Shown here: piece after piece, positions 11,695-61,649 of the stretch
Position numbering within the stretch: position 1 is the stretch's first letter
Layout: each line of letters begins with the position of its first letter
Source of the DNA: Macrostomum lignano
Taxonomy: Eukaryota
Length of the DNA: 64,000 nt
Assembly (NCBI GenBank): GCA_002269645.1
Contig: NIVC01002827.1
Location: 73,686-137,685 of the forward strand
Reading direction: 5' to 3'
Notes under the pieces: model-generated
The model's input: the letters and a program-made list of their open reading frames with translations, nothing else
Database searches by the model: none
What the model was told of the DNA's origin: nothing
Program-made: the position numbers and the translations under genes

Positions 11695-11705
11695 CCAATC
11701 AATCG

Positions 11706-11766
<61 letters not shown>

Positions 11767-11990: not shown

Positions 11991-12018
11991 GCCAAACAAC
12001 CCATCAACCATTGTGCAG

Positions 12019-12960: not shown

Positions 12961-13032
12961 GATGAAGGTACACATTGATACAGGGATGAAGGATATCGAT
13001 GCAGGGATGAAGGGACACATTGACCATTGCAG

Positions 13033-13243
13033 GCGCACTCGTCCGTGGAGAAGGCCGCGGTGATCAGTCTGGTTCAGATTCGATTTGTCCCATCCGACGA
13101 GCGGCACTCGATGCGCGGCGCTGCACTGGAGCGCATGATCGCCGAGGACGTTAAACGGGGCTTGCAGCCGTTTTACGTTTGCGCCACGCTGGGCACCACC
13201 GGAGCCTGCGCGTTTGACGTGCTTGAAGAGATCGGGCCAGTGT
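13033..13243 (+). CDS. HDC: Histidine decarboxylase, coding exon 4
   Basis: Acceptor TTGCAG|[21 protein letters not shown]...[28 protein letters not shown]. Phase-1 donor T|GTGAGT. Confidence 0.92.
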
Positions 13244-13274
13244 GTGAGTTTCCGCGGGGACCTGTCAACATCTT

Positions 13275-26100: not shown

Positions 26101-27360
26101 TGTCTAACAGGTGACTCTAGTGTCTAACAGGTGACTCTAGTGTCTAACAGGTGACTCTAGTGTCTAACAGGTGACTCTAGTGTCTAACAGGTGACTCTAG
26201 TGTCTAACAGGTGACTCTAGTGTCTAACAGGTGACTCTAGTGTCTAACAGGTGACTCTAGTGTCTAACAGGTGACTCTAGTGTCTAACAGGTGACTCTAG
26301 TGTCTAACAGGTGACTCTAGTGTCTAACAGGTGACTCTAGTGTCTAACAGGTGACTCTAGTGTCTAACAGGTGACTCTAGTGTCTAACAGGTGACTCTAG
26401 TGTCTAGCAGGTGACTCTAGTGTCTAACAGGTGACTCTAGTGTCTAACAGGTGACTCTAGTGTCTAACAGGTGACTCTAGTGTCTAACAGGTGACTCTAG
26501 TGTCTAACAGGTGACTCTAGTGTCTAACAGGTGACTCTAGTGTCTAACAGGTGACTCTAGTGTCTAACAGGTGACTCTAGTGTCTAACAGGTGACTCTAG
26601 TGTCTAACAGGTGACTCTAGTGTCTAACAGGTGACTCTAGTGTCTAACAGGTGACTCTAGTGTCTAACAGGTGACTCTAGTGTCTAACAGGTGACTCTAG
26701 TGGCTAACAGGTGACTCTAGTGTCTAACAGGTGACTCTAGTGTCTAACAGGTGACTCTAGTGTCTAACAGGTGACTCTAGTGTCTAACAGGTGACTCTAG
26801 TGTCTAACAGGTGACTCTAGTGTCTAACAGGTGACTCTAGTGTCTAACAGGTGACTCTAGTGTCTAACAGGTGACTCTAGTGTCTAACAGGTGACTCTAG
26901 TGTCTAACAGGTGACTCTAGTGTCTAACAGGTGACTCTAGTGTCTAACAGGTGACTCTAGTGTCTAACAGGTGACTCTAGTGTCTAACAGGTGACTCTAG
27001 TGTCTAACAGGTGACTCTAGTGTCTAACAGGTGACTCTAGTGTCTAACAGGTGACTCTAGTGTCTAACAGGTGACTCTAGTGTCTAACAGGTGACTCTAG
27101 TGTCTAACAGGTGACTCTAGTGTCTAACAGGTGACTCTAGTGTCTAACAGGTGACTCTAGTGTCTAACAGGTGACTCTAGTGTCTAACAGGTGACTCTAG
27201 TGTCTAACAGGTGACTCTAGTGTCTAACAGGTGACTCTAGTGTCTAACAGGTGACTCTAGTGTCTAACAGGTGACTCTAGTGTCTAACAGGTGACTCTAG
27301 TGTCTAACAGGTGACTCTAGTGTCTAACAGGTGACTTTAGTGTCTAACAGGTGACTCTTC
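14181..27360. repeat. 20-bp satellite (CTAACAGGTGACTCTAGTGT)n, about 655 copies, filling HDC intron 7
   Basis: Direct tandem array. Degenerate copies continue to about 27490, close to the acceptor. Confidence 0.99.
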
Positions 27361-27529
27361 TCTCCAACCAAATGACTCTAGTATCGAACCAGATGACTCA
27401 GTTTCTAAAATGTGAATTGAATATCTATACAGTTAACACTAGTGTATAACAGTTGATTCAAATATCTAACAGGTCACAAGTGTCTAATGTTTAATTGCCT
27501 GCCACCCGAACTTTCAACCACCACTGCAG

Positions 27530-28377: not shown

Positions 28378-28794
28378 GGCGACAATGTGAACACAGAGAC
28401 GCTACTGAAGCGGGTGAACAAATCCGGCCAGATCCACATGGTCCCAGCCGCTTTGAAAGGCCGCTACATCATCCGTTACACGGTCACCTCGCCCATGACC
28501 ACCGAAGCTGACTTGGACTTCGACTACTCCGTCATTAGCGACATCGCTGGTCGAGTTTTGGCCGACGTCGGGCGTGAGCAGCAGCTCCAGCAGCAGAAAC
28601 AGAAACAGCTGCTACAACTGCAGCAACAGCAGCAACTGCAGTTGCCGCAGCAACCGATGCCACAGCAGCCGAGACGGCCACCAAAGAGAATCGGCGACTA
28701 TCGAATGTCTCTGTTGCTAAGCAACGTGACATCCCAGCCGAAGTTTGTCGACAGCTCGTTCGCCGCTCTTACTGACAGTCGAGAGTTGGCCAGG
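28378..28794 (+). CDS. HDC: Histidine decarboxylase, coding exon 9
   Basis: Acceptor CCTAG|GGC. GDNVNTETLLKRVNKSGQIHMVPAALKGRYIIRYTVTS ends the catalytic domain, followed by a polyQ stretch and SLLLSNVTSQPKFVDSSFAAL, which resembles the insect HDC tail motif SLLLSNSPMSPKVVNGSFAAI. Donor AGG|GTTGGT. Confidence 0.87.
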
Positions 28795-29670: not shown

Positions 29671-30679
29671 AGGCCGATTATCGAAATTTTGCAGGTTCGG
29701 GTTGGTTCTAATTTATTTAACAACTTTGAGAACATTTTCTAGCGTCGATTTCTGGTTTTACTTCTGCAGAAATCATATTTTTTGAATGGGATTGAATAAT
29801 TTACTTCAAAGGTTTTATTGGTACTTTTATCAAGTGTTGGAAATTGATTTTAGACCAATAGCTGTATTTAAGTCCACTGTCTGCGACCTATAAATTTAGC
29901 AATATGCAGTAGTATTTTTCAGTAGTATTTTAGTTTTTCTGCGCTTAAATGTTGCTACATGTATTTCAAATTAACTGATCCTTTGCTGTTGTATGTTAAT
30001 GTATTACCTTAGCAAGCTGTGTGCACGCTGTACGCGTATTTATAATCGTAAATAATGTTTCCTATAATAGCTACGGCGGACTGTATTTGCACGCCTATAG
30101 ATTCTTAGATTTTTAGAACCTAGCCAAGAACGTTATAATTATCTATTAATTGTTTTTATTTCCTCTTTATTTGTTTTTGTGTACACTAAGAAAGCACATT
30201 GGAGTATAATCTTAGATTGTCTTTATCCGTCGGCATTGAAACACATCAGACAGAAAAAATTAGAGCACTAACCATTTTTTGTTTTATTTTGTTTAATCGC
30301 TTAAATACTACGTTAAAAGATATTAATCCGTCAGTTCGTCTGCATATCGTAGATAAATATTGTACTTTAGAAATGATTGCACACGGCTATTGAAATTATT
30401 TGTTGCTGTTATTCAAAATTTATTCATTTATTAGTAAAACTAAAATGTTTAAATTAATATTACATTGACGGACAATATATCAATACGAGTAAACTTTTTG
30501 TTAGTTTGTTAGTCTGAGCACTTTTAATAGTGCCCAATAAATATTGACTATGGTATTTATTGCCAGATCGACTACTAACAATAGTGCTTCAGTTTCACGG
30601 CCCGCTGAGAAAGTCTATGGTAAAGGTACAAAAATTAGATGTCTATAAAAGACTCGGAAAGTCTATTGGAAAGTTTATA

Positions 30680-31019
30680 TTGGTTTTGTCAGCCTAACTG
30701 AGAATAAAGCCATCCAAAGTGAGAATCCCGCCTACACTGACCGCGAAGGGCCCGGCTGCGTGCAGCCTTAGTCCATGGGCCATAGACAATAAAGGACAAG
30801 CAAAGTGATAAAAAGCCATCCAATGTGAGAATCGATTGGTCTATGCGTCGTATTCTTTTATTTTTATACCTTCTGAGCCATATGACTAGCCAATCCTAGC
30901 CTATCCTTTATAGTCTATGGCCCATAGACTAGGCTGGACACAGCTAGGCCCTTCGTATTCAGCGTAGGCAGGATTCTCACTTTGGATGGCTTTATTCTCA
31001 GTTAGGCTGACAAAACCAA
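30680..31019. mobile_element. MITE with long TIRs and TA target duplication
   Basis: TA-TTGGTTTTGTCAGCCTAACTGAGAATAAAGCCATCCAAAGTGAGAATCC...GGATTCTCACTTTGGATGGCTTTATTCTCAGTTAGGCTGACAAAACCAA-TA. The TIRs are perfect for about 48 bp and imperfect to about 110 bp. Confidence 0.88.
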
Positions 31020-32840
31020 TACCAGTAACATGTGGTGGTGTATTGCATTTGCAAATTTTATTGGCGGCAGTGATAATGGATGTCTTTCTGCGATAGCTTT
31101 ACACTTCTATTAGCTATTTAATAATTGTACAGTAAGTTAGTGCAGGCCTCATGAAGCTACCGAATCGACTAACTTTCAAATTTCAAAGTTACATTCGCGC
31201 CTCGATCTGAGCATCATTCGGACGTTTGTCAAACCGCGACGTACTCGACGTCAACATAAGTCGCTAGAAAATTGGTGTTTTTACGTTACGCCGACGGATG
31301 GCAAGGCTATACCGGTACGTCGGCCGAATGTGGGAGTAATGTAACTTATTTAATAGCGACGTCGAAGCGTTGGCCAATGTCGCCGAAGTCGGATTTTGCT
31401 GTATGGGCCCCGTAAGCATACTGAAACTCAGCATCAGAATTGTGCATCCAGGTCAGAAAAACCCGTCGCGTCACTGGCTAGATCGGACACAATCCATATA
31501 AATATTTGCTAACTACAGCACAAATTTACATGCAGCATAAATAATATCAGATCGGGATCGAGCAGCTTAACGAAAAACGCATGTGACTCTCGCGTCACAA
31601 TTCAGCTAGGAGCATGCAATTTGCCAGTGGGTTGTCGGTTGTCGTGCGACAACCCACAATTAGAACAAATTGTGGCACAATATCCGTAAAAAATCGTGTA
31701 GTGATTACCGCTGTAAAAATCGATCGCGAAATTTTAGCGTACCCGTCGATGGAAGTCTTTAACAAAGCAGGTAATTTTTATTACGCCGACGGATAGCGAC
31801 GTTTAAAGTAGGATAGCTCGTACTAGTAATTTTCGTTGTATTATATACATATGGTTTACTCGTAGTAAATATAAGTATATATGTAGCATATATTTCGATA
31901 GATTCGAAAAACGAGTTGGCAAGCATATTGCGAATCAAGCCCTCTTAAACGACTAACTGAGTGGGGGGAATTTAGAAACAGAAAAGTACTGTACAAATTA
32001 AGAAGCATTCAAAAAATGTAGAAGGAAAATACGGATTTACCCACTAAAATAGAACGTAATAAACCATATTAGTAGCTGGAAATTACACATACAACAATGC
32101 ATATATCATAACAGCGTACCATTTCATACCATTAGCAACCCTTTCCGAGTGACGCCGATAGACGTCGCAATTATCAGATGCCAGTAGTTAACACAACTTG
32201 TTAACACATGCCAGTAGATTATCGTAAGATATTGAGAAATAGCATTAATATTTTACGTGAAAATAACATGGATAAATACAGAATGTGATAGACACACAGC
32301 TATAATTGATTGGACAACTATAGACACTATTAGCACGATTCAAAGACGAATTAATTGGATCTTTAAGTGAATTAATTTAACAGATTTTCCAATTAAATGT
32401 ATGATCATATGCACTGAAATTGCAGTGCTTTCTGAACAGTTTAGATCAGCACAACGCAAATGTAAATAAAATTTAATTCAATATTAAAAAATTGAATGAC
32501 ACGAAGTTCATGTTTTGTTTTTAGTTCACGTTAAGGTCGTTATGAGGACTTACATTATAAAGTTCTTTTATACCACCTTCTTGCACTTATGACCTATGAG
32601 CCACTAAATTACACGATTGACGAAAAACGAGCACAAGCCATGTGACAAGGACCACTCTAAAAGTTACCGTTGTCTACGTTGTTGTGTTTTTATGGTAACT
32701 TCTAGTGGTCCTTGCCATGTGATCGCTATTAAAATTAGCTTCGCTGAATGAAGGTGTGATCGAGTCCTAGAAGGTTTTCTATACTTCAACTATGCCCTTG
32801 CAATACTTGCTTCTGGTGAGGTTAGAGTACAACAGATATA

Positions 32841-35402
32841 TTAAAGCGTCTCTAGTATTACGCCAGGAACTCTACCAGGCTTACTGACATATACAACGAC
32901 ATCGTAGATATTTTCAACTTCACTTCTATCATTGGAACTACCGTTTAGAATGATGTCAGTAGCTGGTTGCTGAGCCGTTCGTCTCGAACGCCGGCGGAGC
33001 CAGAATCCAAGCGCTATCAAAGCGCCACAACCGAGCACTACAGCAGACAGCAGCAGAGCCAGTCGACGATAGAAACTTGCCGGATCGACGCTTTCAGCGA
33101 TCAAATCAGAGTTCACCATCATCTTCTTAAGGCTCTCTGACCTATCTGAGTTAATCAGCTGGTCTTCGAATGCAGTAGAGTAGAAACAAGTCGGATCTTC
33201 AGCACAGATTGTGTCGCTACCGTTGTACTCCACTTTCCGAGAGTATCTTACCAGTTCTATATGGCCGAGGACTTCAATGTCAGGGTAGTGATAGTTAAAC
33301 ACCGCGGTGAGCGAACCCGATTTCTTTGACGCTTGTTCTTTAAAAAGGTTCAGTAAATTTGGCGTGCTCTTCATGGCGGCAACGTTTACGCTAAAAATGA
33401 GTTGACCATTTTTATTGTCATACTCGATGCTCAATGCGTCTTGCCAATCGCATTCGATTAGGAATGCTCGTGTGAGCGCGAGTCCGTTTAGACTGAAATG
33501 TCCAGTAAAGCGAGCTCCAGAAGATGTTACAGACTCAAGGAACCGTCGCTCGATAGAAAACTTCCAGTCAATGCAACTGTAAATCAGGCACAGATGTTTC
33601 CATGAGCAGTGACTCGCACTGCTAGCTGTGACATGGGCTGCTGGGAGAATTTCGGGAACTAAAACGATGTGGGAGCGAGCACGCATCCAGTACATCGGCA
33701 GTTCGGGCTCACCGTCTTGTATAGATTGCACTGTACATACAAAAGTATTTGCGTCTTCAAATGAAGCTGAAGTATTTATTCCGTAGAAACGATTCAAATT
33801 ATTTTCAGTCGGAGGTAAGTATGCAGTCTGTTTGGTAAGAATCGACGAAAACAGCGAGTTTCTTTGAGTTTTAGTTTTATAATTGACACTTATTCGCGTG
33901 TCTGCTTGTTCCGACACTTCAGTCTCGCAAGTCAGGTTTATGCTGTCACCCTCAGCTACCAAAACTCGATCTGGAGGGTACCTCAGTCCCTGTGGTGGAA
34001 CAACTACATGAACTTGTATATGTGCAGACACTCCTCCTGCTCTGCACATGTAGTCACCACCGTGACTTTTCTGCGACAGTTTCTTTGGCAGTTCGATCAC
34101 GTGACCTCCAGTCGCGATCTTTATTCCATTGGCAAGCGTTGTCCATTGCTTAGTAGGGTAACCTGTTGACAATTGAGCAATCAAAGACTGATTGTTGTGG
34201 TAAAACTCGGATTGACGACTCCCGATCGCCGAGTTGCACACAATCGGACAAGCTAAATGAGAGCGCACCATTCCTGATCGAAGAGTTACACTTCTTCTTT
34301 TCTTACCAACAAGACTGCATTTTGCACCGCGAACTACAAGTGGTGTTCCAGACTGTCTTGTGCTCGGAAGAGACAAGCGTCCAACTCTTCGGCGAACCTC
34401 GTAAGGTTCCCGTTCGCCAGAAAGTGACAGAATGACGCAAAATGTGACGTCTCCTGTGCTGCGTTGTTTCATTACATCCATGATGCCAATTGAGAACAAT
34501 TTCAATCTACCTGTAGCCACGTCCAGTTGTGCATGCCGCATCAGATCCAAGTTCCACTGGTCTAGCTTCGTGTAGAAATTATTTGTTAGAATAACTGATC
34601 GGCTGAACTGCAGATTCTGACAATGGTCTGGACTGAGCGCAAGGCCTACATTGATCAACGGCTGCAAGAATGGAGGAGCTGACTTGATCAGGTTGACTAA
34701 ATTATCACTTATGATTTGGACACTTTGCGCTCTGTCCACCTCTGACTCGATCATGCCTCGCGAAAACAAAGCATTCAGTATTTCCGATGCATTGTGAACC
34801 AAAGTAGGAATTTTCAACCAAGCATCCATGGTCCAAACGTAGAGTCGACCGCTTTCCATCAGAATCGTGCCATCGAAGCCTTTCCATACCACCTGCAGAA
34901 TCAGCGCATCGCTAAACTTCCCGGCGAGAGCTGATCTTTCGAAACGCCAGTTGGATTTTTCAACAAGTCTAATCAGTAATTCTGTGCGGTCTATTGAGAA
35001 CAGCTCGAAAGGACTGCCGGCTGTCAAGCAAAGCTTCTCATTCCTTGTCGTTACCAGCCGATCTTTAAAGTTCCCCTGTAGTAAAGCAGTTTCAGAAGCA
35101 CCTTGTTTACATTTATATCGCAGATAAATACTGTTGTACGCTTCGATATGCTTCGCTAATGAAGGAAAGTCAACTTTGATTTTGAGCACGTGACTGGGTG
35201 ACTCAGCAGATAAAACGGCCAGCTGTGCTGTTCTCTGTTGACTAGCAAACCATGTGTCGCCCCACATCAGCAAATTCTGGTTGTTGGATGCTACCAGAGC
35301 GAAATCCATTTGTAAAAGCAGCGCTGTAGCAACAATCTGAATGAGTTGTAAATGAATTAATTTGTCAATAGAAATGAAAAGCAATGCAAAATTGTTTAGC
35401 AA
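32841..35402 (-). CDS. Type-I membrane protein with two Ig-like domains (paralog A)
   Basis: 853-codon ORF. Ig motifs LAC...HGGDYMC and AEGDSINLTC...EDANTFVC, TM segment LALLLSAVVLGCGALIALGFWL followed by RRRSR, short tail with NIYDVV. The true 5' end is probably a splice acceptor (CATTCAG|ATT at 35336) rather than the TTG start. Confidence 0.8.
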   Translation of the reverse strand: MLNNFALLFISIDKLIHLQLIQIVATALLLQMDFALVASNNQNLLMWGDTWFASQQRTAQLAVLSAESPSHVLKIKVDFPSLAKHIEAYNSIYLRYKCKQGASETALLQGNFKDRLVTTRNEKLCLTAGSPFELFSIDRTELLIRLVEKSNWRFERSALAGKFSDALILQVVWKGFDGTILMESGRLYVWTMDAWLKIPTLVHNASEILNALFSRGMIESEVDRAQSVQIISDNLVNLIKSAPPFLQPLINVGLALSPDHCQNLQFSRSVILTNNFYTKLDQWNLDLMRHAQLDVATGRLKLFSIGIMDVMKQRSTGDVTFCVILSLSGEREPYEVRRRVGRLSLPSTRQSGTPLVVRGAKCSLVGKKRRSVTLRSGMVRSHLACPIVCNSAIGSRQSEFYHNNQSLIAQLSTGYPTKQWTTLANGIKIATGGHVIELPKKLSQKSHGGDYMCRAGGVSAHIQVHVVVPPQGLRYPPDRVLVAEGDSINLTCETEVSEQADTRISVNYKTKTQRNSLFSSILTKQTAYLPPTENNLNRFYGINTSASFEDANTFVCTVQSIQDGEPELPMYWMRARSHIVLVPEILPAAHVTASSASHCSWKHLCLIYSCIDWKFSIERRFLESVTSSGARFTGHFSLNGLALTRAFLIECDWQDALSIEYDNKNGQLIFSVNVAAMKSTPNLLNLFKEQASKKSGSLTAVFNYHYPDIEVLGHIELVRYSRKVEYNGSDTICAEDPTCFYSTAFEDQLINSDRSESLKKMMVNSDLIAESVDPASFYRRLALLLSAVVLGCGALIALGFWLRRRSRRTAQQPATDIILNGSSNDRSEVENIYDVVVYVSKPGRVPGVILETL

Positions 35403-38400
35403 ATTTATTGCGAACGTTGGCTCAGTATCTAATATAGCTGAGCTGTTGGTGTAAAATTGAGGAGATACTTAGTCATCTGCCTATTTGTCAACCGACGGAT
35501 TCTGGTCATTAGTGTATATGCAAGTAGACTTTAGATTTTCTACAAGGTAATATACTATTAAAGTACTATACTATTGAAGGAAAAATTTCAAAAAAATATA
35601 TAGAATTTTTATTTACCAAAATATTCAGCGGCATGGCGTTGTCGAGAAGAATTTTCTTCCAGAAGAACCACTACAAAAACCTGTCGTCTGTATTGTGCTT
35701 TGTGTGACAGATTGATTTTTAAAACAGTTGCTCCTTAGAACGCTACACTGGACATTGCAGTTATATTCCAGGTTATTGGCAGATTAAATAGTGACCCATG
35801 CTAAAATGTCCTTTAATTTTAAGGATTGATATGATATACAATTATAGTAGCTAAGTTCAGCATTCTAGAATGAACTAAAGTTATAATGGCAAAGTCATCA
35901 GTCGCAGTGATGTTCACTTGGCGGAATTCTAACTTTTGCAGAAGCTTTGCCTTCTGTCACAGCTATATTTATTATATTTCTTATTTTACGCTTGGTACCG
36001 CAACGTGCTTCTAAAATTTCCAGATTATACGCCCTCGTAATGACAAGAGAGAAGTTGATTTTTAGAAAACACTATCTCTTGATTACGTTGCTATAACTGT
36101 TCTAAATCTGCTGTAAATTTTTGCAAAGTTAAGACTGAAATGCATAGAACTATCTTTATAGGCCCAACTAATTTTGATGAATTGCATGGTTTTGAAAATT
36201 GAAACGTTACCTTGTGCTAGAAAATTGGGACTCCTTTGACTTTTGGAAACAGCAGCCAGAGAACAGGCATAATACTATCAATTTGCGCATAAAATTCTCA
36301 TTTTGCATGCTGTTATAGGTTACAGTCTGCTTATAAAAACATCACGGACAACTTAATAAGTTACTAAATTTTCCTCTAGTTGCATCAATCTTTTACAGTT
36401 TCGACAATCGTATAATTGTGGCTACGAGTATTAGGGAAGCTAATCTACGAGACGTACTAAGAGTTGTGCATTTTTCCAACAATGACAACAAAAGCCAGTC
36501 AACGAAGGAAATGCCAAGTTGCCAGAGAAGGTCTTCAAGAGTGCACTTTATTATCAGTGCGATATATCCCTGATTGTCTAATGCGCTCCTAGATCGAGCT
36601 CAAGAAGGATGAGCGCAGAATTCTAGGTTATGGTGAACTTTTTTTACTATATCTTTCACGTAAAACAAAACTAGGCTGTACGATATGAATGCAAAGCTAA
36701 AAGCTATATATTACAGTATATTATACATTCGTTCATTCGATCCGAGCCGTCCTCCAGTCCGAAGTGCTGCCCGACCGCCAGAGGGCTCGGCTGTGGCAGG
36801 CGGTGGTCGAAACCGTCCTGCTTTACAACGCCGAGTGGACGCTGACGGCTGCGCTAGAGCGGCAGCTGGACTCGGCGCACTCAGGGCTGCTCCGTGCGGC
36901 CTTTCGAGCTAACGAGAGCGTCGGAACCGAGGCCCTGTACGATCGGGCCAAGCTGCAGCGCCCGTCCACCATCCTGCGCCAAAGGCGACTTAAACTGGCG
37001 GGCCACGTGATCCGGGCCGAGGGCTACTGCCCCCAACCTGTTCAGGACGTCCTGCTGCTCACTTTGCAGGGTCCGTTCATGCGGGGTCAGGCCCGAACCC
37101 GTCGATACGTCGACTGCCTGCTGTGGACTTTGTTCGCTCCCAGGCTCTGCGGCGCGCCATCTGACGCGCCCTGCTCTAACTGTGACTGTGCATGCGGGGT
37201 CGCGTATTTTGTTGTTGTTGTTGTATATTATACATTACAATATATAAAACATGTTTTTTTAAAGCCAGAAATGTACAATGAAATGCAAGTAAAGAAAAGC
37301 GAATCAGGATAAAACCAATAGTAACCGGCATGAAACATCTGTTGATGCTAGTCGTATAGTGTATTTCTTAAGAAAACTGTACAATTGCGGACAAGATTTT
37401 TTTCAAGAAAAATATGTAAGTGGAACAGCAAGACTTCGTTGGAAAATACATTTAGGAGCGTATTACCTCTACAGAAATCTTCACATTGACTTTCTAATTT
37501 GTGTGATTAAATCGTTGCTCCGCGAGCCGTGCGTTATGGCTAGCAGCAATTTTCACAAAACAGGAAGTTTATGCAACGTCAAAATGGTAGATGAAGCCTA
37601 TTCCAACACGAGGCAATGCCCATCTAAGCTCGTTAAAACGTAGGCATAAATAATCCTGTTGTTGCGTAGGTCAACTGAATATTTAAATTAAAAATTAACA
37701 AAGTAGCCATAGGCGCATCGAAAAAAAGTTTGAGTGATGACGAATCGTAGACTTTCTGGGAGAAGTCTGGTATCGTTTAAGTGTCTGCTGCTTCGAGGAC
37801 TAGTGGTAATTACTTTAATTTATGAATTTATTTCAATGCCATACTTAGTAAGTTAGATGACAATATGCAAAGCGGGAAACATTTTAAGACTTCCACATGC
37901 ACGAGACTGGGCCTTCTGGTATGATGCTTCACGAGAGGATTCACTTTTAGATACTTATTAAAACAAATATTTCCAAGCGTTTATTAAAAACTGAAAAAAG
38001 ACAGTTTGTTCCAATTCAGCTAAACTTTTTCTATTCTAAACGCGCAGGTTGCAGCCACAGTCTTCTATCTGCCACATACATCGGCGCAACGAAATGGTGA
38101 CAATCGGTATTTGCTGCTATGGGGCGACACCTGGTTTGCCAGTGCACCCAAATTAGCACAGCTGGCCATTTTATCCGCCGAATCGTCCGGTCATATTCTG
38201 AATATCAAAACTGACCTTCGCTTCGGGATGACTTCAGAGAACGCAACTAAATATTGTTTCTTAAAATACAAATGTAACATCAGTGATTCTGATACAGACT
38301 TTTCAGAAGTAAGTCTTCACAGAAATTTAAATGAACAAAAGAAAAAGCTATGCTTCCGAGGCGCTATCGCCTTTGAGATTGAATCGACAAGTGGTTTCGA

Positions 38401-40403
38401 TAATTTCGGTTTTCAACTTATTAAATCTTTGGAACAAGGAAGTAAAAACTATAAATTTACTCCCACATTCCGAGATGCACTGACATTGCAGGTGGTATGG
38501 AAAGGCTTCGATGGCAAGATTCTGATGGAAAGCGGTCGACTCTACGTTTGGACCATGGATGCTTGGTTGAAAATTCCTACTTTGGTTCACAATGCATCGG
38601 AAATACTGAATGCTTTGTTTTCGCGAGGCATGATCGAGTCAGAGGTGGACACAGCGCAAAGTGTCCAAATCATAAGTGATAATTTAGTCAACCTGATCAA
38701 GTCAGCTCCTCCATTCTTGCAGCCGTTGATCAATGTAGGCCTTGCGCTCAGTCCAGACCATTGTCAGAATCTGCAGTTCAGCCGATCAGTTATTCTAACA
38801 AATAATTTCTACACGAAGCTAGACCAGTGGAACTTGGATCTGATGCGGCATGCACAACTGGACGTGGCTACAGGTAGATTGAAATTGTTCTCAATTGGCT
38901 TCATGGATGTAATGAAACAACGCAGCACAGGAGACGTCACATTTTGCGTCATTCTGTCACTTTCTGGCGAACGGGAACCTTACGAGGTTCGCCGAAGAGT
39001 TGGACGCTTGTCTCTTCCGAGCACAAGACAGTCTGGAACACCACTTGTAGTTCGCGGTGCAAAATGCAGTCTTGTTGGTAAGAAAAGAAGAAGTGTAACT
39101 CTTCGATCAGGAATGGTTCGCTCTCATTTAGCTTGTCCGATTGTGTGCAACTCGGCGATCGGGAGTCGTCAATTCGAGTTTTACCACAAAAATCAGTCTC
39201 TGATTGCTGAATTGTCAACAGGTTACCCTACTAAGCAATGGACAACGCTTAACAATGGAATAAAGATCGCGACTGGAGGTCACGTGATCGAACTGCCGAA
39301 GAAACTGTCGCAGAAAAGTCACGGTGGTGACTACATGTGCAGAGCAGGAGGAGTGTCTGCACATATACAAGTTCATGTAGTTGTTCCACCACAGGGACTG
39401 AGGTACCCTCCAGATCGAGTTTTGGTAGCTGAGGGTGACAGCATAAACCTGACTTGCGAGACTGAAGTGTCGGAACAAGCAGACACGCGAATAAGTGTCA
39501 ATTATAAAACTAAAACTCAAAGAAACCCACAGTTTTCGTCGATTCTTACTAAAAAGACTGTATACTTACCTCCGACTGAAAATAATTTGAATCGTTTCTA
39601 CGGAATAAATACTTCAGCTTCCTTTGAAGACGCAAATACTTTTGTATGTACAGTGCAATCTATACAAGACGGTGAGCCCGAACTGCCGATGTACTGGATG
39701 CGTGCTCGCTCCCACATCGTTTTAGTTCCCGAAATTCTCCCAGCAGCCCATATCACTGCTAGCAGTGCGAGTCACTGCTCATGGAAACATCTGTGCCTGA
39801 TTTACAGTCGCATTGACTGGAAGTTTTCTTTCGAGCGACGGTTCCTTGTGTCTGTAACATCTTCTGGAGCTCGCTTTACTGGACATTTCAGTCTAAACGG
39901 ACTCGCGCTCACACGAGCATTCCTGATCGAACGCGGTTGGCAAGACGCATTGAGCATCGAGTATGACAATAAAAATGGTCAACTCATTCTTAGCGTAAAC
40001 GTTGCCGCCACGAAGAGTACGCCAAATTTATTGAACCTTTTTAAAGAACAAGCGTCAAAGAAATCGGGTTCACTCACCGCGGTGTTTAACTATCACTACC
40101 CTGACATTGAAGTCCTCGACCATATAGAACTGGTAAGATACTCTCGGAAAGTGGAGTACAACGGTAGCGACACAATCTGTGCTGAAGATCCGACTTGTTT
40201 CTACTCTACTGCATTCGAAGACCAGCTGATTAACTCAGATAGGTCAGAGAGCCTTAAGAAGATGATGGTGAACTTTGATTTGATCGCTGAAAGCGTCGAT
40301 CCGGCAAGTTTCTATCGTCGACTGGCTCTGCTGCTGTCTGCTTTAGTACTCGGTTGTGGCGCTTTGATAGCGCTTGGATTCTGGCTCCGCCGGCGTTCGA
40401 GAC
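32981..40403. repeat. Large inverted duplication, arms about 32981-34897 and 38487-40403
   Basis: Line-by-line comparison of the arms gave about 34 nucleotide differences in about 1.9 kb (roughly 98% identity). Identity ends abruptly at CGTTCGAGAC just after the TM segment and at TGCAGGTGGTATGG on the N-terminal side. Confidence 0.95.
36730..37222 (+). mobile_element. 5'-truncated RTE-like LINE
   Basis: Encodes the end of a non-LTR RT (AVVETVLLYNAEW...ILRQRRLKLAGHVIR), has a (GTT)n tail, and a 14-bp TSD GTATATTATACATT at 36716-36729 and 37223-37236. Confidence 0.85.
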
Positions 40404-40552
40404 ATCAAAGTGTCGTGTCTACAAGGCCGCAATGCCGCTGGGAAACTGAGCCCGGAAACAATTTCGAACGGCAAGACGCTTACGATGTCGTACTTTTTGT
40501 TGATAAGCCAGAGCCGACTGCTGTTATTAGAAATGATTTTTGTCGTAAATAG
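38048..40552 (+). CDS. Type-I membrane protein with two Ig-like domains (paralog B)
   Basis: The 813-codon ORF at 38111 extends upstream in frame to acceptor CGCGCAG|GTT (38048; VAATVFYLPHTSAQ). Same Ig-Ig-TM layout as paralog A, tail with DAYDVV. Confidence 0.8.
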   Translation, partial: VAATVFYLPHTSAQRNGDNRYLLLWGDTWFASAPKLAQLAILSAESSGHILNIKTDLRFGMTSENATKYCFLKYKCNISDSDTDFSEVSLHRNLNEQKKKLCFRGAIAFEIESTSGFDNFGFQLIKSLEQGSKNYKFTPTFRDALTLQVVWKGFDGKILMESGRLYVWTMDAWLKIPTLVHNASEILNALFSRGMIESEVDTAQSVQIISDNLVNLIKSAPPFLQPLINVGLALSPDHCQNLQFSRSVILTNNFYTKLDQWNLDLMRHAQLDVATGRLKLFSIGFMDVMKQRSTGDVTFCVILSLSGEREPYEVRRRVGRLSLPSTRQSGTPLVVRGAKCSLVGKKRRSVTLRSGMVRSHLACPIVCNSAIGSRQFEFYHKNQSLIAELSTGYPTKQWTTLNNGIKIATGGHVIELPKKLSQKSHGGDYMCRAGGVSAHIQVHVVVPPQGLRYPPDRVLVAEGDSINLTCETEVSEQADTRISVNYKTKTQRNPQFSSILTKKTVYLPPTENNLNRFYGINTSASFEDANTFVCTVQSIQDGEPELPMYWMRARSHIVLVPEILPAAHITASSASHCSWKHLCLIYSRIDWKFSFERRFLVSVTSSGARFTGHFSLNGLALTRAFLIERGWQDALSIEYDNKNGQLILSVNVAATKSTPNLLNLFKEQASKKSGSLTAVFNYHYPDIEVLDHIELVRYSRKVEYNGSDTICAEDPTCFYSTAFEDQLINSDRSESLKKMMVNFDLIAESVDPASFYRRLALLLSALVLGCGALIALGFWLRRRSRHQSVVSTRPQCRWETEPGNNFERQDAYDVVLFVDKPEPTAVIRNDFCRK

Positions 40553-43949: not shown

Positions 43950-46900
43950 TCAGTCATTGCTGCTGTCCCGTCTGATGTCCGGAGCCTTTCGCCAGTCGCC
44001 CTCTTCGTAGCGTTTCGGCGTCTCTTTAGCTTGTCGGGGGTGCGGCCTGTTGGCGAGCGGGACGTCCTGGTCGGCGGTTGGCTCGTATGGGCCGGTTGGT
44101 TCGTCCGGCTGGCTGTCCTGTCCGCTGTCTCGTTCCTCGTGGCCGTCTGGCCAATCGTCGGCTACCTGGGAGGCTCGCTTGACGTGGGTGGCGTGCCTGG
44201 AGCACCTTTGGCCGGCCCGCTGGAGCTGCAGGGTGTTGCCGCAGACTTTTGCCACGGTCCACGGCGAGGCCTCGAAGAAGGGGTTGGTCTTTCTGCGGTT
44301 GGTGAGCCGGCGGAAGACGAGGTCACCCTCGGTGATTTCGTGGTCGGTGGCGCCCCTCTTGCTGTCTGCGAATGCCTTCATCCGCTCCTTTGCCCTGGAG
44401 TCGTGGCCGCGGACGGTCTGTCGCCTGGCGTCAACCGGTCGGGAGTAGTGCAGGCTGGGGGATCGTGTCGTTGAGCTGTCGGCCGAACAGCAGGTCGGCT
44501 GGGGCCATGCCGGTTGTTGCGTGCGGTGTTCGACGGTAGGCCGCCAGGTAGTCGTCCATTGCCGTCTGCCAGTCGCTGCTCTCCAGGATCGCCGCTCTGA
44601 TTGCCTTATTGAGGCCCCGGTTGCATCGCTCCACGAGTCCGTTGGCTTAAGGGTGCAGCGGTGTAGTCCGATGGTGGTGGATGCCCTGACTGCTCAAGAA
44701 GGCGTTGAACTCAGCAGACGAGAATGGCGGGCCGTTGTCGGTGGTCATCTTGACTGGTTGGCCAAACGTGCTGAACTACTGGCAGAGGGTTCGGATGACC
44801 GGGACTGCTGCTGTCGACCCCGCCATTGTCTGTATCAGTGGAAAACGTGAAAAAGTCGGTGCACACCAGCAGCATGTGGCCTCTGATCGGTTCCAAGAAC
44901 TCCAAGCCCAACTCTCGCCAGGGCCCCTGCGGCAACTCAGTAGGCTGGATTGGTGCTGCCTTCAGCTCAGCTATGTTCGTGCAGGCCTTGCAGCTGAGAC
45001 AGGAGTTTACAAAATTCTCGACGGAGGCCTGCATAGAAGGCCACCAGACCTTTGTCTGCAGGCGTGCCAAGGATTTTTGGACACCCAGGTGGCCTTGGTG
45101 CTCCAGATGCAGGCAGCGGTAGCGCAGAATGTCGGGAACGACGATTTGGTGCCCTTTGAGCAGGAGTCCGTCGTGCTGTGAGAGCTCGTACCGCAGGCTG
45201 TGTAGGCTGCGCGTGTCGTGGCTTTCGAGTTGCCACCGCTGGGACTGGGCCCGGATACGGCGGCTTGGATCGCCCTGGCGCCTCCGGAGGCCGCCTTGAT
45301 CGTGTCGGGGCTGATGCTGTTCGGTGCCGCTGCCTAAGCCGTCATTGCGCTGTAGGCCGTGTCGAGATCTTCGCCCTCGTTGTTCGGCGGTGTTGGACGT
45401 GGCTGGCGGCTCAGGACATCCGCCGGGTTGTCTGCCCCTGGTGGGTAGGTGACTTTGAAGTGGAGCTCCTGCAGCTGAAGTGCCATGCGCTCGATCTGCG
45501 GCGGGGGCCGAGAACCAGGGCTGAGCAGGCTGACTAGCGGCTTGTGGTCGGTGAAAACCTTGAACTTTGGGCAGCCGCTAAGGTAGTGGTGGGATTTGAG
45601 GCAGCCGAATTTGATGGCCAGCGCCTCCCTCTCTGTCTGCGAGTAGCGCTGCTCTGTGTCACTGGCGTAGGCTGGCGTAGGTGATTGGCTTGGTGACACC
45701 GCTCGGTTGCATCTAGGCGAGGATCGGCCCGAGGCCGGTCGGCTGGCCTGGTCTCGCAGTTTTTGTTGAAGAAGGCAAGCGTGGTGCTGTGTGCGATCGA
45801 CTGCATGATGGAATGGAAGGCAGAGGCTTGCTGTGGGCCCCAAGACCACTGCACGTTCTCCTTGGTCAGCTCTCGAAGGGGCCTCGCTTTGTCGGCGAGA
45901 TTTGGGATGAAGCGGACTACGAATGTGACGAGTCCGCGAGGAAGGACCGCACCTCCGTTGCATTTTCTGGTCGCTTGAAGTTGGCCACAGCCTCCAGCTT
46001 TTCCTCGGTCGGTTAGATTCCGGCCGCCGAGAGGCGCATGGCCAGGAAGTCGGCCTGCTGGGTCGCAATGCGGCATTTGCGGGGGTTCAGAGTCACGTTG
46101 TGTTGGCGCAGCCTGTCAAGGCAGTTGCGCAGCCGCTCGTTGTGCTCTCAGCTTAGGGTGCTGGCAAAGATGATTGACGTGACGCGAAAGCCAGGAGCTG
46201 ATTGTTGTTTAATAACGAATGTGAATGCTTGCGATATATTTGTAGGATAGCCAAAGTTACTTGACGAGCTAAAGACCGAGAGCAATAGCTTAAATATTGT
46301 AAATATTAAATTTCACTGATGCACTGGCTAAATGAGTGGGGAGAGTACAAAATGGTAGAGACTTAAGGGGCAGATCGCAAGCTGCAACCAAAGTGACCAA
46401 GCGAAGTTAAGCAGACAAACCCCGCAAAGTTACCATTACCAATCAACCGTCACTTCAATGATGATGTCGTCATGGACCCACCGCACGCCCCTCAAACCGC
46501 TCAGGATGGAAGTCATGACGCGCTGTAGGATTTTTGATGCTGAAGTAAATCCCATGCAAAGACGCTTGAGGCGAAGCAGGCCCAGAGGTGTTGAGAAGGT
46601 GAGGAGGTGACGTGACTTCTCGCTGACCTCGATCTGGTGGAAGGCCTTGGCAACGTCCTGTTCGGAAAAGTAGGTGGAGCCGGCCATCTCATCTGTGACT
46701 TCCTCAAATGTCGGTATTGGCTGCTTTTCTGGAACGACGTACTTATTGACGTCCCTCAGGTCCTGTGTGATGCGGATCTCACCTGGCGAGGCCTTCGGGC
46801 AGATCAACATACGTGAACTCCAGGCACTGGGCCCCGTCACTCGCTCCAGGATGCTGGCTGCTAGCTGGTCTTTCAGCTTTTTTCCACTGCGGTTCGAAGA

Positions 46901-48264
46901 TGCACCTTGACTAGGGACGGAGGGTGGCAGACTGGCACCGCTTCTTCTTTCAGCTGGATGCTGACTGAGACGCCCTTGATGCAGCCAATTCCTTGAAACC
47001 TGTCGCTGAACTCCTTCATGATTTATGAATCTTGCGGAAGGTGCAGGTCGTTGACTGTTGGTGTCAGTCCGGCGGTGAGAGCTGTCTCAGCCTGCGGTCC
47101 GACCCTCAGCATCCCCATCTGCGTGCTTGTCCCGCGGCATAGATGGTGATGCAGTCCTCTCTGATGACGATGAAGCGCACTCACTCCGAGTTCCCGTTGA
47201 TCTTCGTGTGCAGAGTGATCTGGCCAGCGGGTGTCAGGGGTCTCGCTGCTCCAAGAGGATAGACCCTTGTGTGTATGGGCTGCAGCGCCAGCTCGGGTGC
47301 TCCCGTTAGACGAAGTGTCCGCTGGCTGAGCACGTTGCAGCTCGCGCCGCTGTCGATCAGGACGGGTCGTTCGAGCCGTTGATGACCGCTTTGAAGGTGG
47401 CGCTTCTGCGGCTGGGGTTCGAGGCTGGAGAATGCGCCACTGCCGGTTCCTCTGGTTTAGGCTCTGTCATGTTGATGCGTGCGCGGCCGCTTAGGCAGGC
47501 CTTCGCCAGGTGGTGCAGCTTGCCGCAGTTGCTGCCGCGCTTGCCTTGGGCCCGGTTGCAAGTGCGGTGGCCGGGCTCTCCGCACCTCAGGCATTTGTCG
47601 GCCGGGCTTGCTGGCGGGCGCCTTGCGGGGCGCTTGTCGCGAGCCGCATGCACTTCTTCACCTGGTCCGGCTGCTGGGCGCTCCATGGCCGCCTGCTGGC
47701 TGGCTGCTTCGTTTGTTCTCGCCAGCTGGGGGCCTCTGGGAGGCTGATGTTGGGCACGTTCCTGAGCAGCCGCTTTCGGAGGGAGTCGCTACGGCAGCAG
47801 GCGACGATCTGGTCGCGGATGAGAAACAGCTGGCGCAGCTCTCCGAACTAGCAGGCCCCAGCCGCGTTGCACAGTCGGATGTACCACCTGTTGATGGCTT
47901 CCCCGTCCACTGAGCTGCGTGCACTGGCGGAATTGGTACCGGGTGAACACGACGTTGTCGCGTCCTTGAAAGTGCTGAGTTAGCGCCGCTATGAGTGAGT
48001 CGAGCGTTTGCTGCTCCGGCCTGTCAGTTGCTGGCCGTGTCGCTGAGATCTCTTTAAAATGTCCGAGACCTCTTTTCCCGCAGTGTACAGGAGAATTTCC
48101 TGCTTCTGGGCGTCGTCAGACACTCCTGATGCTGCAGGAATCGCTTTAGTGTGGTCGCCCACTCTTTCCAGCGCTTGCTGACGGTGTGAGAGTCCGCGCT
48201 GACGCTGAATGCGGATTGCGGCTGTAGCTGTAGTAGCGCCATTTGGTTCTGGTTTGCGATGCCA
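43950..48264 (-). mobile_element. Degenerate Ty3/Gypsy (Mag-like) LTR retrotransposon, internal region
   Basis: Order on minus: gag (ATG 48242, SKRWKEW; CCHC CLRCGEPGH), protease (VLIDSGASCNVL about 47350), RT (QDLRDVNK...HDDII), RNase H (YSQTEREALAIKFG...FTDHKPL), integrase (GPWRELGL...ERCNRGL...YRRTPHATTG). Many frameshifts and stops. Candidate PBS TGGCATCGC at 48264-48256. LTRs not resolved. Confidence 0.92.
46175..46457. mobile_element. Solo LTR inserted in the Gypsy RT
   Basis: 283-bp AT-rich insert with termini TGACGTGACG...CGTCACTTCA and a 5-bp TSD ATGAT (46170-46174, 46458-46462). Removing it restores HDDIIIFASTL. Confidence 0.85.
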
Positions 48265-61578: not shown

Positions 61579-61649
61579 GTATATTGTCTGATCTGGATTT
61601 TTGTGGAATGGAGTTTTGTGAGAGATAATCGCTCTTAGACTAATTCTAT

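What the first reader, a model, noticed from the sequence alone, without database searches (positions are those of the whole stretch)
32841..40552. Head-to-head pair of novel Ig-domain receptors: homogenised core, divergent tip and tail
Two long single-exon ORFs face away from each other. Seen in the sequence: the middle about 630 codons (helical region, two Ig domains, stalk, TM) differ at only about 21 amino acids and about 11 synonymous codons by manual count. The N-terminal about 130 aa are only partly alignable (WGDTWFAS, YKC, KLC anchors), and the cytoplasmic tails are unalignable apart from YDVV. Both breakpoints are sharp. Inference: an old duplication whose core is kept homogeneous by gene conversion between the inverted arms, while the membrane-distal (ligand-facing) domain and the signalling tail diverge. 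This is the architecture of paired immune receptors and allorecognition molecules such as the Hydractinia Alr proteins. I do not recognise the family.
Basis: partly seen in the sequence, partly recalled or inferred. Interest (0 to 1): 0.85.

Follow-up and report, generated by a model that had tools for sequence, protein, structure and literature searches.

The report
Gene-converted inverted pair of flatworm receptor genes
Two neighbouring, oppositely oriented genes for flatworm-specific cell-surface proteins have had their middle 1.9 kb recently copied from one to the other, while both ends stay anciently different; this is a clear but not unprecedented case of gene conversion, in a protein family nobody has described.

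Summary
ORFs 32841-35402 (-) and 38111-40552 (+) are transcribed divergently. They share a 1930-bp inverted repeat (32981-34910 / 38474-40403) with 39 substitutions and no indels. Synonymous divergence (dS) is 0.034 in the core and about 1.5 or saturated at both ends, and both breakpoints lie inside the coding sequence. This is interlocus gene conversion between old inverted paralogues.

Corrections:
- Neither ORF has a usable ATG. Both have a phase-0 splice acceptor 24 codons upstream of WGDTWF, so an upstream exon or a spliced leader must supply the start.
- The family is not an orphan. Exhaustive HMMER finds full-length relatives, all in the flatworm Macrostomum lignano. Several of these carry an L1/neurofascin-type Bravo_FIGEY cytoplasmic tail, which the window pair lacks.
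- The predicted fold best matches contactin/neurofascin Ig chains.
- Repeats shared at 85-93% identity place the window in M. lignano or a close relative.
- M. lignano holds a second inverted pair with a converted core (2213 bp, 98.8%). Its direct tandem pairs are not homogenised.

The paired-immune-receptor and allorecognition reading fails every test that could be run: no ITIM/ITAM, no charged transmembrane residue, no homology. The closest precedents are the head-to-head genes SIGLEC11/16 and regional conversion in protocadherins. Interest is moderate.

The parts
32841..35336 (-). Gene A, main coding exon: from the inferred splice acceptor (exon starts at 35336) to the stop codon at 32841-32843; 831 codons
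   Evidence: ORF. Acceptor ...ctcattcag|ATTGTT read. Similarity to gene B starts right at the AG. Aligns over its full length to M. lignano proteins P0001-P0006.
38048..40552 (+). Gene B, main coding exon: from the inferred acceptor (exon starts at 38048) to the stop codon; 834 codons
   Evidence: ORF. Acceptor ...ctaaacgcgcag|GTTGCA read. No in-frame ATG before codon 40 of the listed ORF. Family alignment.
32981..34910 (-). Arm A of the inverted repeat, the gene-conversion tract (643 codons: alpha/beta region, two Ig-like domains, membrane-proximal Cys-rich region, transmembrane helix, RRRSR)
   Evidence: 1930 nt, 39 mismatches, 0 gaps; dS 0.034; 24 transitions, 15 transversions.
38474..40403 (+). 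Arm B of the inverted repeat, the gene-conversion tract
34911..35336 (-). Gene A divergent N-terminal 'tip' (142 codons: end of signal peptide plus a beta-rich domain with conserved W25, W29, C76, C103)
   Evidence: 38% identical to the B tip, dS about 1.5. Invariant columns. Beta strands in the AF2 model (low confidence).
38048..38473 (+). Gene B divergent N-terminal 'tip' (142 codons)
32841..32980 (-). Gene A cytoplasmic tail (about 46 codons plus stop). It contains YDVVVYVSKP and ends in -ETL.
   Evidence: No Bravo_FIGEY match.
40404..40552 (+). Gene B cytoplasmic tail (about 49 codons plus stop). It contains YDVVLFVDKP and ends in -CRK.
   Evidence: No Bravo_FIGEY match.
32997..33065 (-). 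Gene A transmembrane helix (LALLLSAVVLGCGALIALGFWL), no charged residue
   Evidence: Hydropathy scan. Helix 752-783 in the AF2 model.
40319..40387 (+). Gene B transmembrane helix (LALLLSALVLGCGALIALGFWL)
33657..34319 (-). Gene A, two Ig-like domains (CPIVC...W...GGDYMC, then NLTC...TFVC)
   Evidence: Pfam Ig_3 E 9e-4, below threshold. Profile match of the F-G strand motif to obscurin Ig, E 0.03. AF2 pLDDT 78-87 over the first domain. Foldseek matches to contactin and neurofascin Ig chains.
39065..39727 (+). Gene B, two Ig-like domains
   Evidence: Pfam Ig_3 E 3e-4, 21.5 bits, below the cut-off of 30. Same residues as in A.
35337..38047 (.). Unique spacer between the two acceptors. It should hold both promoters and any first exons, and it contains a LINE RT-like fragment at 36746-37312.
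   Evidence: No A/B similarity here. The fragment is 70.7% identical to M. lignano L002 13896-14268. Candidate first exons are listed.
35617..35634 (-). Candidate exon 1 of gene A (ATG CCG CTG AAT ATT TTG | gtaaat; MPLNIL). Unverified.
   Evidence: Phase 0, 280-nt intron. Joined to exon 2 it gives a signal-peptide-like MPLNILIVATALLL.
37737..37805 (+). Candidate exon 1 of gene B (MTNRRLSGRSLVSFKCLLLRGLV | gtaatt; alternative donor GTAAGT after 37847). Unverified.
   Evidence: Phase 0, intron of 242 nt (or 200 nt with the alternative donor).

Best explanation
These are two real, divergently transcribed paralogous genes for type I membrane glycoproteins. They belong to an undescribed family found only in Macrostomum flatworms. 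The inferred protein layout is: signal peptide, a beta-rich tip domain, an alpha/beta region, two Ig-like domains, a Cys-rich membrane-proximal region, one transmembrane helix and a short tail. The duplication is old, because dS is at least 1.5 at both ends. Recently (dS about 0.03) a 1.93-kb tract running from the tip/core boundary to just past the transmembrane helix was copied non-reciprocally from one inverted copy to the other, in one or a few events. As a result the two proteins now carry different tips and different about 50-residue tails on a 96% identical body. Shown: the mosaic divergence, the family membership, the membrane topology signals, and a second converted inverted pair in M. 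lignano. Inferred: the proteins act as cell-surface adhesion or recognition molecules (Ig-chain fold like contactin/neurofascin; paralogues carry the ankyrin-binding L1-type tail). The tails signal or sort through the shared YDVV (YxxPhi) motif rather than through ankyrin. The start codon comes from an upstream mini-exon or from the ATG-terminated spliced leader.
For: Inverted repeat of 1930 nt with 39 substitutions and no indels. Core dS 0.034, against 1.53 in the tip and saturation in the tail. Identity falls to 26-33% within 100 bp outside the tract, and both ends lie inside the ORFs. Core omega is 0.48, below 1 with binomial P = 0.024. Both ORFs are intact for more than 810 codons. All 14 ectodomain Cys that are invariant in the family are kept. 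Exhaustive HMMER found full-length relatives only in M. lignano, E 1e-39 to 1e-21. The Bravo_FIGEY domain (PF13882) scores 37-61 bits in three paralogues. The AF2 model built with the family alignment gives contactin-1, neurofascin-155, CNTN2 and DSCAM as top Foldseek hits, E 1e-11 to 1e-10. A-B tip identity is 38%, within the family's inter-paralogue range of 27-49%. A-B core identity is 96%, against 35-45% between other paralogues. Independent second case: in M. lignano locus L004 (same as L005), the gene for P0029 and an unannotated inverted copy share 2213 bp at 98.8%, with diverged signal peptide and C-terminus. Direct tandem pairs in L001 and L002 are uniformly 40-46% identical with no converted tract.
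Against: There is no expression evidence. Neither protein, nor anything more than 50% identical to it, is in the protein collections, so the genes are unannotated wherever the window comes from. Neither ORF has its own ATG plus signal peptide, unlike the M. lignano homologues. GC3 is not significantly raised in the core, so long-term repeated conversion is not shown. The AF2 model is only moderately confident (mean pLDDT 53.7), so the domain assignments outside residues 200-445 are weak. The function is inferred by analogy only.
Confidence: 0.75

Rival explanations
1. The pair are decaying or silent relics (pseudogenes) that look similar only because conversion keeps copying one onto the other. 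No function is being maintained.
For: No in-frame start codon with a signal peptide in either ORF. The genes are absent from all protein sets searched. Core omega of 0.48 is only mildly below 1. A carries two Arg-to-Cys changes at CpG sites relative to B. The inverted partner in M. lignano L004 carries a 1-bp frameshift.
Against: Both reading frames are open for 813 and 853 codons. All family-invariant Cys, Trp and motif positions are retained in both genes, including in the anciently diverged tips. Tip dN/dS is 0.36 over a saturated dS. Equivalent phase-0 acceptors are conserved in both genes. A conserved YDVV island sits in otherwise unalignable tails.
Confidence: 0.12
2. A recent inverted duplication of a whole gene came first. 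The two ends were then overwritten from other family members elsewhere in the genome, or diverged very fast under positive selection.
For: The family is multi-copy, so donors exist. Tips of recognition molecules often evolve fast.
Against: This needs four extra events instead of one. Positive selection cannot raise synonymous divergence to about 1.5. The A and B tips are each other's nearest relatives (38%, against 20-26% to all other known members). No flanking non-coding homology survives, as it would after a recent whole-gene duplication.
Confidence: 0.06
3. Assembly artefact: the second arm is a chimeric or mis-joined inverted copy of a single gene.
For: Macrostomum lignano assemblies come from a repeat-rich hidden polyploid, and inverted chimeras occur in long-read data (general knowledge).
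Against: The arms are separated by 3.56 kb of unique, non-palindromic sequence, and each continues into its own diverged but homologous tip and tail. The differences are 39 substitutions with a 24:15 transition:transversion ratio and no indels, unlike read-error noise. The same kind of structure is present on two separate M. lignano contigs for another family member.
Confidence: 0.04
4. One reading: a paired immune or allorecognition receptor locus in which selection keeps the ligand-facing tip and the signalling tail different while conversion preserves a common scaffold.
For: Different tips and tails on a shared body. A lineage-restricted, fast-diverging, clustered Ig-type family. The M. lignano L004 pair shares the whole ectodomain but has different C-termini. 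The head-to-head genes SIGLEC11/16 are a precedent for conversion in paired receptors (PMC5701461).
Against: No ITIM, ITSM or ITAM in either tail, and no charged residue in the identical transmembrane helices. The tip, which paired receptors share, is what differs here. Paralogues carry an adhesion-type ankyrin-binding tail. Tip divergence is no greater than between any two paralogues, and dN/dS is 0.36. There are no polymorphism data.
Confidence: 0.06

Closest known systems
SIGLEC11 / SIGLEC16 (primate paired Ig-superfamily receptors)
   Same: Two Ig-superfamily type I membrane receptor genes lie head-to-head a few kb apart. A tract of about 3 kb is kept nearly identical by gene conversion, and the remainder, including the cytoplasmic ends, differs (PMC5701461, read).
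   Different: In the Siglecs the converted part is the N-terminal ligand-binding V-set/C2 region, and the partners differ in having an ITIM versus a charged transmembrane residue. Here the N-terminal tip is excluded from the tract, the transmembrane helix is inside it, and no immune signalling motifs exist. There is no sequence homology.
Clustered protocadherins (regional gene conversion in teleost and mammalian Pcdh variable exons)
   Same: Large single-exon adhesion-molecule ORFs in which the membrane-proximal part of paralogues is homogenised (more than 99% identical). The membrane-distal, specificity-bearing EC1-EC3 part stays divergent and escapes conversion (PMC1852091).
   Different: The Pcdh paralogues are direct tandem arrays with many members and show raised GC3 in converted regions. 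Here there is a single inverted pair, GC3 is not significantly raised, the cytoplasmic tail is also excluded, and the fold is different (cadherin versus Ig-like).
L1CAM / neurofascin / NrCAM family
   Same: Type I membrane proteins with a chain of Ig-like domains. The best structural matches of the model are neurofascin-155 and contactin Ig1-6. M. lignano paralogues carry the family's Bravo_FIGEY cytoplasmic domain above Pfam's threshold.
   Different: The window proteins have no Bravo_FIGEY tail and no such exon nearby. No FN3 domains are detected. Only two Ig-like domains are recognisable by sequence. The ectodomain has no significant sequence match outside Macrostomum.
Macrostomum lignano 'Bravo_FIGEY / Ig-like domain-containing' proteins (e.g. 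PAA49069.1, PAA70766.1, A0A1I8GDY1; no published description found)
   Same: End-to-end alignment at 22-32% identity (E down to 1.6e-39). Shared framework of 14 ectodomain Cys, plus the WxxxW, CPIxC and CFYST motifs. One large coding exon. Genes occur in local pairs.
   Different: The window pair forms an outgroup to the six annotated clusters. It lacks the genomic ATG and the FIGEY tail. It is arranged head-to-head, whereas the M. lignano pairs seen are tandem (two pairs) or tail-to-tail (one pair).
Hydractinia Alr1/Alr2 allorecognition proteins
   Same: Only the general idea, recalled from own knowledge: invertebrate Ig-like type I membrane proteins with a variable membrane-distal domain, encoded in a gene cluster.
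   Different: No detectable homology, since no cnidarian hit appeared in the exhaustive search. Allelic hypervariability, the defining property of Alr, could not be examined. No ITAM- or ITIM-like motifs.

Membership tests
Interlocus (ectopic) gene conversion between paralogues | A sharply bounded tract of near-identity inside otherwise diverged paralogues | tested here: met
   98.0% identity over 1930 nt. Ungapped identity is 26-33% in the 100 bp on either side.
Interlocus (ectopic) gene conversion between paralogues | Synonymous sites are homogenised too, so protein-level constraint cannot explain the identity | tested here: met
   dS is 0.034 in the tract, against 1.53 in the tip and saturation in the tail.
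Interlocus (ectopic) gene conversion between paralogues | Tract ends do not coincide with the ends of a duplication unit, and no flanking non-coding homology is shared | tested here: met
   Both ends lie within the ORFs. The only other A/B DNA match is 125 nt at 76% in the tip.
Interlocus (ectopic) gene conversion between paralogues | Raised GC3 in the converted region (signature of repeated, biased conversion) | tested here: inconclusive
   Core GC3 is 0.45-0.46, against 0.30-0.44 in the ends. Fisher P = 0.24 for A and 0.08 for B.
Interlocus (ectopic) gene conversion between paralogues | Tree incongruence between tract and flanks across species or strains | not testable with these tools
   No eukaryotic genome search was available, and no orthologous locus from another Macrostomum species could be fetched.
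Macrostomum ~900-aa Ig-like / Bravo_FIGEY membrane protein family (unnamed) | Full-length significant alignment and the shared Cys/motif framework | tested here: met
   E values of 1.6e-39 to 8e-22 over query residues about 40-800. There are 65 invariant columns, including 14 ectodomain Cys.
Macrostomum ~900-aa Ig-like / Bravo_FIGEY membrane protein family (unnamed) | Bravo_FIGEY cytoplasmic domain (present in clusters 1-3, absent from the Pfam hits of clusters 4-6) | tested here: not met
   No PF13882 hit in A or B. A tail-profile search of the six-frame translation of the window found nothing.
L1CAM family | Six Ig domains followed by FN3 repeats | tested here: inconclusive
   Only weak Ig hits by sequence, and no FN3 hit. 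Foldseek aligns 540-760 columns to neurofascin and contactin Ig chains, but at TM 0.2-0.4 from a model with pLDDT 54.
L1CAM family | Conserved cytoplasmic domain with the FIGQY ankyrin-binding motif | tested here: not met
   Tails are 46-49 residues long with no FIGQY/FIGEY motif.
Paired activating/inhibitory immune receptors | Near-identical ligand-binding (membrane-distal) domain in both partners | tested here: not met
   The tip domains are 38% identical, and it is the remainder that is shared.
Paired activating/inhibitory immune receptors | ITIM/ITSM in one partner; a charged transmembrane residue and a short tail in the other | tested here: not met
   Around the tyrosines the tails read ENIYDVV and DAYDVV, which match neither (S/I/V/L)xYxx(I/V/L) nor TxYxx(V/I). 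The transmembrane helices are identical apart from one V/L difference and are uncharged.
Hydractinia Alr allorecognition proteins | Sequence homology to Alr family Ig-like domains | tested here: not met
   Exhaustive HMMER returned only Macrostomum full-length hits plus generic Ig-repeat proteins.
Hydractinia Alr allorecognition proteins | Extreme allelic polymorphism of the membrane-distal domain with allele-specific homophilic binding | not testable with these tools
   No population or strain data were available.

The most novel reading that the evidence does not exclude
In this flatworm-specific family, inverted gene pairs are a recurrent, selected device. Conversion keeps a common ectodomain body, while the partners differ in tip and/or membrane anchor and tail, giving a functional analogue of paired receptors. 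Because the arms are inverted, a crossover within the core would flip the 3.6-kb spacer and re-assort promoter plus tip with the other tail, producing new receptor combinations. That would make the locus a candidate self/partner-recognition system in an outcrossing hermaphrodite.
Probability: 0.08. Interest if true: 0.7.

Novelty: new member of a known kind. Interest (0 to 1): 0.38.

Why it matters
This is a clean example of regional gene conversion in a lophotrochozoan. One 1.93-kb tract reset about 77% of a 2.5-kb coding exon and left a recognisable membrane-distal domain and the cytoplasmic tail untouched. It also exposes an undescribed, apparently Macrostomum-restricted family of Ig-like membrane proteins. 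Some members carry the ankyrin-binding tail of L1-type adhesion molecules on an ectodomain that sequence searches cannot place. Within the few loci examined, only the inverted pairs are homogenised and the direct pairs are not. M. lignano is a tractable model with RNAi, transgenesis and cell atlases, so the function of the family and the effect of different tips and tails on a common body can be tested directly. The find does not overturn anything: conversion in head-to-head Ig-superfamily receptor genes and in adhesion-gene clusters is well documented.

Tried and rejected
- The word-indexed protein search (search for homologous proteins) found nothing in three attempts: with gene B, with the family alignment, and with a neighbouring decarboxylase exon meant to identify the species. 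Only the exhaustive HMMER scan found relatives.
- Exact-sequence look-ups of four ATG-started versions of A, B and a transposase ORF found no record.
- Single-sequence AlphaFold was useless, with pLDDT 33.
- PDB sequence searches gave only an Ig F-G strand motif.
- I looked for a downstream exon encoding an L1-type tail, using a profile of the M. lignano tails against the six-frame translation of the window. There is none.
- I considered a viral or retroelement envelope glycoprotein, because of the KKRRS dibasic site and nearby retroelement fragments. I rejected it. The homologues are ordinary annotated cellular genes flanked by cellular genes. Foldseek against viral structures gave only generic Ig-fold hits.
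- I considered a cis first exon against spliced-leader trans-splicing. The M. lignano SL ends in ATG (PMC8629364), and both acceptors are in phase 0. However, the acceptors match the reported [T/C]TNCAG trans-splice motif poorly, and several candidate first exons exist. This is undecided.
- The GC3 test for repeated biased conversion was not significant.
- Literature searches for the family, its gene IDs, or gene conversion in Macrostomum found nothing relevant.


Full report
**What is in the sequence**

They are transcribed away from each other. BLASTP gives 83% identity overall. At the DNA level the similarity is one ungapped inverted repeat, 32981-34910 against 38474-40403. It is 1930 nt long with 39 mismatches and no indels. 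The only other match is a 125-nt patch at 76% near the N-termini.

Nei-Gojobori estimates are:

| Region | dS | dN |
|---|---|---|
| Core (643 codons) | 0.034 | 0.016 |
| N-terminal, 115 aligned codons | 1.53 | 0.56 |
| Tail | saturated | 1.05 |

Just outside the tract, ungapped identity is 33% on the 5' side and 26% on the 3' side, which is random level. The mosaic is real, very far beyond chance, and sharply bounded.

**Why this is gene conversion**

- Synonymous sites are homogenised along with the rest, so protein constraint cannot explain the identity.
- Both tract ends lie inside the coding sequence, and no non-coding flank is shared. A recent whole-gene duplication therefore does not fit.
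- The two tips are each other's closest relatives, at 38% identity. That is the ordinary distance between paralogues of this family (27-49%). The cores are 96% identical where other paralogues are 35-45%.
- The simplest history is an old inverted duplication followed by recent non-reciprocal copying of the middle.
- The differences are 24 transitions and 15 transversions with no indels. The arms are separated by 3.56 kb of unique sequence. Each arm runs on into its own homologous but diverged tip and tail. This argues against an assembly chimera.
- Whether conversion is ongoing is open. One 600-bp stretch carries only 3 mismatches (P about 0.01), which hints at more than one event. GC3 is not significantly raised in the core.
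- Core omega is 0.48, below 1 at P = 0.024.

**Gene structure: a correction**

'Single-exon' is probably wrong at the 5' end. ORF B has no in-frame ATG before codon 40. ORF A has only ATGs that would leave no signal peptide. Both genes have a pyrimidine-rich stretch ending in CAG exactly 24 codons upstream of WGDTWF, in phase 0. The A/B DNA similarity begins right at that AG. The first residues after it (IVATALLL and VAATVFYL) align with the C-terminal half of the signal peptides of the homologues.

The start must therefore come from one of two sources:

- A small upstream exon. Candidates are 35634-35617 for A and 37737-37805 or 37737-37847 for B.
- The spliced leader. In M. lignano it ends in ATG (PMC8629364). 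However, the acceptors fit the reported trans-splice motif poorly.

I could not decide between these.

**What the proteins are**

Pfam gives only sub-threshold Ig hits, and the word-indexed database search found nothing. The exhaustive HMMER scan of 1.84 billion representatives found seven clusters of full-length relatives (E 1.6e-39 to 2e-5, 22-32% identity). All other hits were generic Ig-repeat proteins that touch only residues about 420-500.

Every full-length relative is from the free-living flatworm Macrostomum lignano. The databases label them 'Bravo_FIGEY domain-containing', 'Neurofascin/L1/NrCAM C-terminal domain-containing' or 'Ig-like domain-containing'. Pfam confirms the Bravo_FIGEY tail at 37-61 bits, against a cut-off of 23.8, in three clusters. 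It finds nothing in their ectodomains.

The eight-sequence alignment has 65 invariant columns, including 14 ectodomain cysteines and the CPIxC and CFYST motifs.

AlphaFold with this alignment gives a moderate model: mean pLDDT 53.7, rising to 60-87 over residues 200-445. Its best PDB matches are contactin-1, neurofascin-155, contactin-2, DSCAM and sidekick Ig chains, at E 1e-11 to 1e-8 but with low TM scores.

Both proteins have one uncharged transmembrane helix. The window proteins lack the L1-type tail, and no exon for one exists anywhere in the window. Their tails of 46-49 residues share only a YDVV(V/L)(Y/F)VxKP island. YDVV fits the general YxxPhi sorting motif (established knowledge). 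A also ends in -ETL, which resembles a class I PDZ ligand; that is a weak lead only.

**Source organism**

The window shares interspersed repeats with the M. lignano loci I fetched:

- a tRNA-derived element at 85-92% identity;
- a foldback-like element at 92-93%;
- a LINE fragment at 71%.

GC content is also the same. The window is therefore from M. lignano or a very close relative. Nothing more than 50% identical to A or B exists in the protein collections, so the pair is unannotated.

**The family elsewhere**

In M. lignano the homologues have their own ATG and signal peptide in one large exon, plus a terminal exon of about 26-33 codons. They sit in local pairs:

- Two tandem pairs, in L001 and L002, are uniformly 46% and 40% identical with no converted tract.
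- At the P0029 locus (L004, and again on a second contig, L005) there is an unannotated inverted, tail-to-tail copy.

That inverted copy shares 2213 bp at 98.8% with the annotated gene. The differences are 25 substitutions and one 1-bp deletion, or 13 synonymous and 9 non-synonymous codon differences. Identity falls to 50-70% in the signal peptide and to about 42% just before the transmembrane helix. The copy ends in a short hydrophobic C-terminus with no FIGEY tail.

The same phenomenon thus occurs twice in this family, both times between inverted copies, but with different boundaries. In L004 the tip lies inside the tract. That weakens the idea that tips are specifically protected from conversion across the family.

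**Function and mechanism**

Shown:

- type I membrane topology signals;
- a cysteine framework typical of secreted domains;
- Ig-like domains;
- family membership;
- the conversion event itself.

Inferred: these are cell-surface adhesion or recognition molecules. The two genes present different tips and different short tails on a near-identical body. The tails work through the shared tyrosine motif rather than through ankyrin.

**The immune-receptor analogy**

The paired-immune-receptor and allorecognition analogy fails the tests available:

- There is no ITIM, ITSM or ITAM, and no charged transmembrane residue.
- The shared part is not the ligand-facing end.
- There is no homology to Alr or to any non-flatworm protein.
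- Tip divergence is no greater than between any two paralogues, with dN/dS 0.36.
- Polymorphism, the decisive property, could not be examined.

**Comparison with known cases**

- The closest genomic precedent is SIGLEC11/SIGLEC16. They lie head-to-head about 9 kb apart, with a tract of about 3 kb kept alike by conversion (PMC5701461). There, however, it is the N-terminal binding region that is shared.
- The closest pattern precedent is the clustered protocadherins. The membrane-proximal part of large variable exons is homogenised, and EC1-EC3 escape conversion (PMC1852091). Those are direct arrays and show raised GC3.

**Verdict**

The gene-conversion inference is supported, and the functional analogy is not. 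This is a new example of a known evolutionary process, in an undescribed and lineage-restricted family with an L1-type connection. Interest is moderate.

Noticed in passing
window 14189-27474: A 13.3-kb tandem array of a 20-bp unit (TGACTCTAGTGTCTAACAGG, about 665 copies, 95% matches). It lies between two plus-strand exons of a pyridoxal-dependent decarboxylase gene. The first exon is about 13027-13250 (PF00282, 88 bits). The second is a C-terminal-like exon at about 28387-28560 with no Pfam hit. The array therefore probably sits in an intron.
   Followed up: partly
window 12640-12958: A tRNA-like sequence (Rfam tRNA, 30 bits, 12887-12956, minus strand) sits inside a repeat of about 300 bp. 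That repeat has copies 85-92% identical in M. lignano loci L002 and L006. It looks like a tRNA-derived SINE.
   Followed up: partly
L004 16834-19280 (= L005), M. lignano NIVC01002255.1 / NIVC01004193.1: An unannotated inverted copy of the neighbouring family gene (P0029). It is 98.8% identical over 2213 bp and has its own diverged signal peptide. It carries a 1-bp deletion that splits the frame (opposite coordinate 10980 of the forward copy). Its C-terminus is short and hydrophobic, replacing the transmembrane helix and Bravo_FIGEY tail.
   Followed up: yes
window 36746-37312: A LINE reverse-transcriptase-like ORF fragment lies in the spacer between the two genes. It is 70.7% identical to M. 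lignano L002 13896-14268 and has no Pfam hit.
   Followed up: partly
window 51463-51860: A repeat 92-93% identical to two inverted copies in M. lignano L001 (814-1134 and 1176-1521). It resembles a foldback or MITE element. This is the strongest evidence that the window is from M. lignano or a sibling species.
   Followed up: partly
window 44001-48000 and 45334-46068 (-): A GC-rich block (0.58-0.62, against about 0.42 around it) contains a Ty3/gypsy-type RT_RNaseH fragment (PF17917, 55.6 bits). This is probably an LTR-retrotransposon remnant.
   Followed up: no
window 48781-49947 (-): An intact 388-codon ORF with an N-terminal C2H2 finger, an HTH_Tnp_4 domain and a weak DDE_Tnp_4 match, so a PIF/Harbinger-type transposase. 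It is not on record as an exact protein.
   Followed up: partly
window 57427-61638 (+): A 1403-codon ORF dominated by about 48 copies of a 36-bp (12-residue) SQAYQQSAPPPA-type repeat and poly-Q stretches. The end of the ORF resembles the start of the Sec16 conserved region by eye only, and there is no Pfam hit.
   Followed up: no
window 1-12000 and 61652-64000: Minisatellites and microsatellites are unusually dense. Examples are (AGAC)n at 4158-4752, (ATAG)n at 8547-9174, a 27-mer repeated 40 times at 9794-10886, (ATCA)n at 11233-11962 and a 28-mer repeated 34 times at 61652-62604. These generate long spurious ORFs.
   Followed up: no
window 33451-33453 and 33574-33576 (gene A codons 610 and 651): Both Cys residues that A has and B lacks are TGC against CGC. 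These are CpG-transition differences, Arg in B and Cys in A, at positions that are not Cys in any M. lignano homologue.
   Followed up: partly
window 30678-30768 / 30931-31021: A 91-nt inverted repeat, 90% complementary with a 162-nt spacer, lies about 1.8 kb downstream of gene A's stop codon. Its nature is unknown.
   Followed up: no
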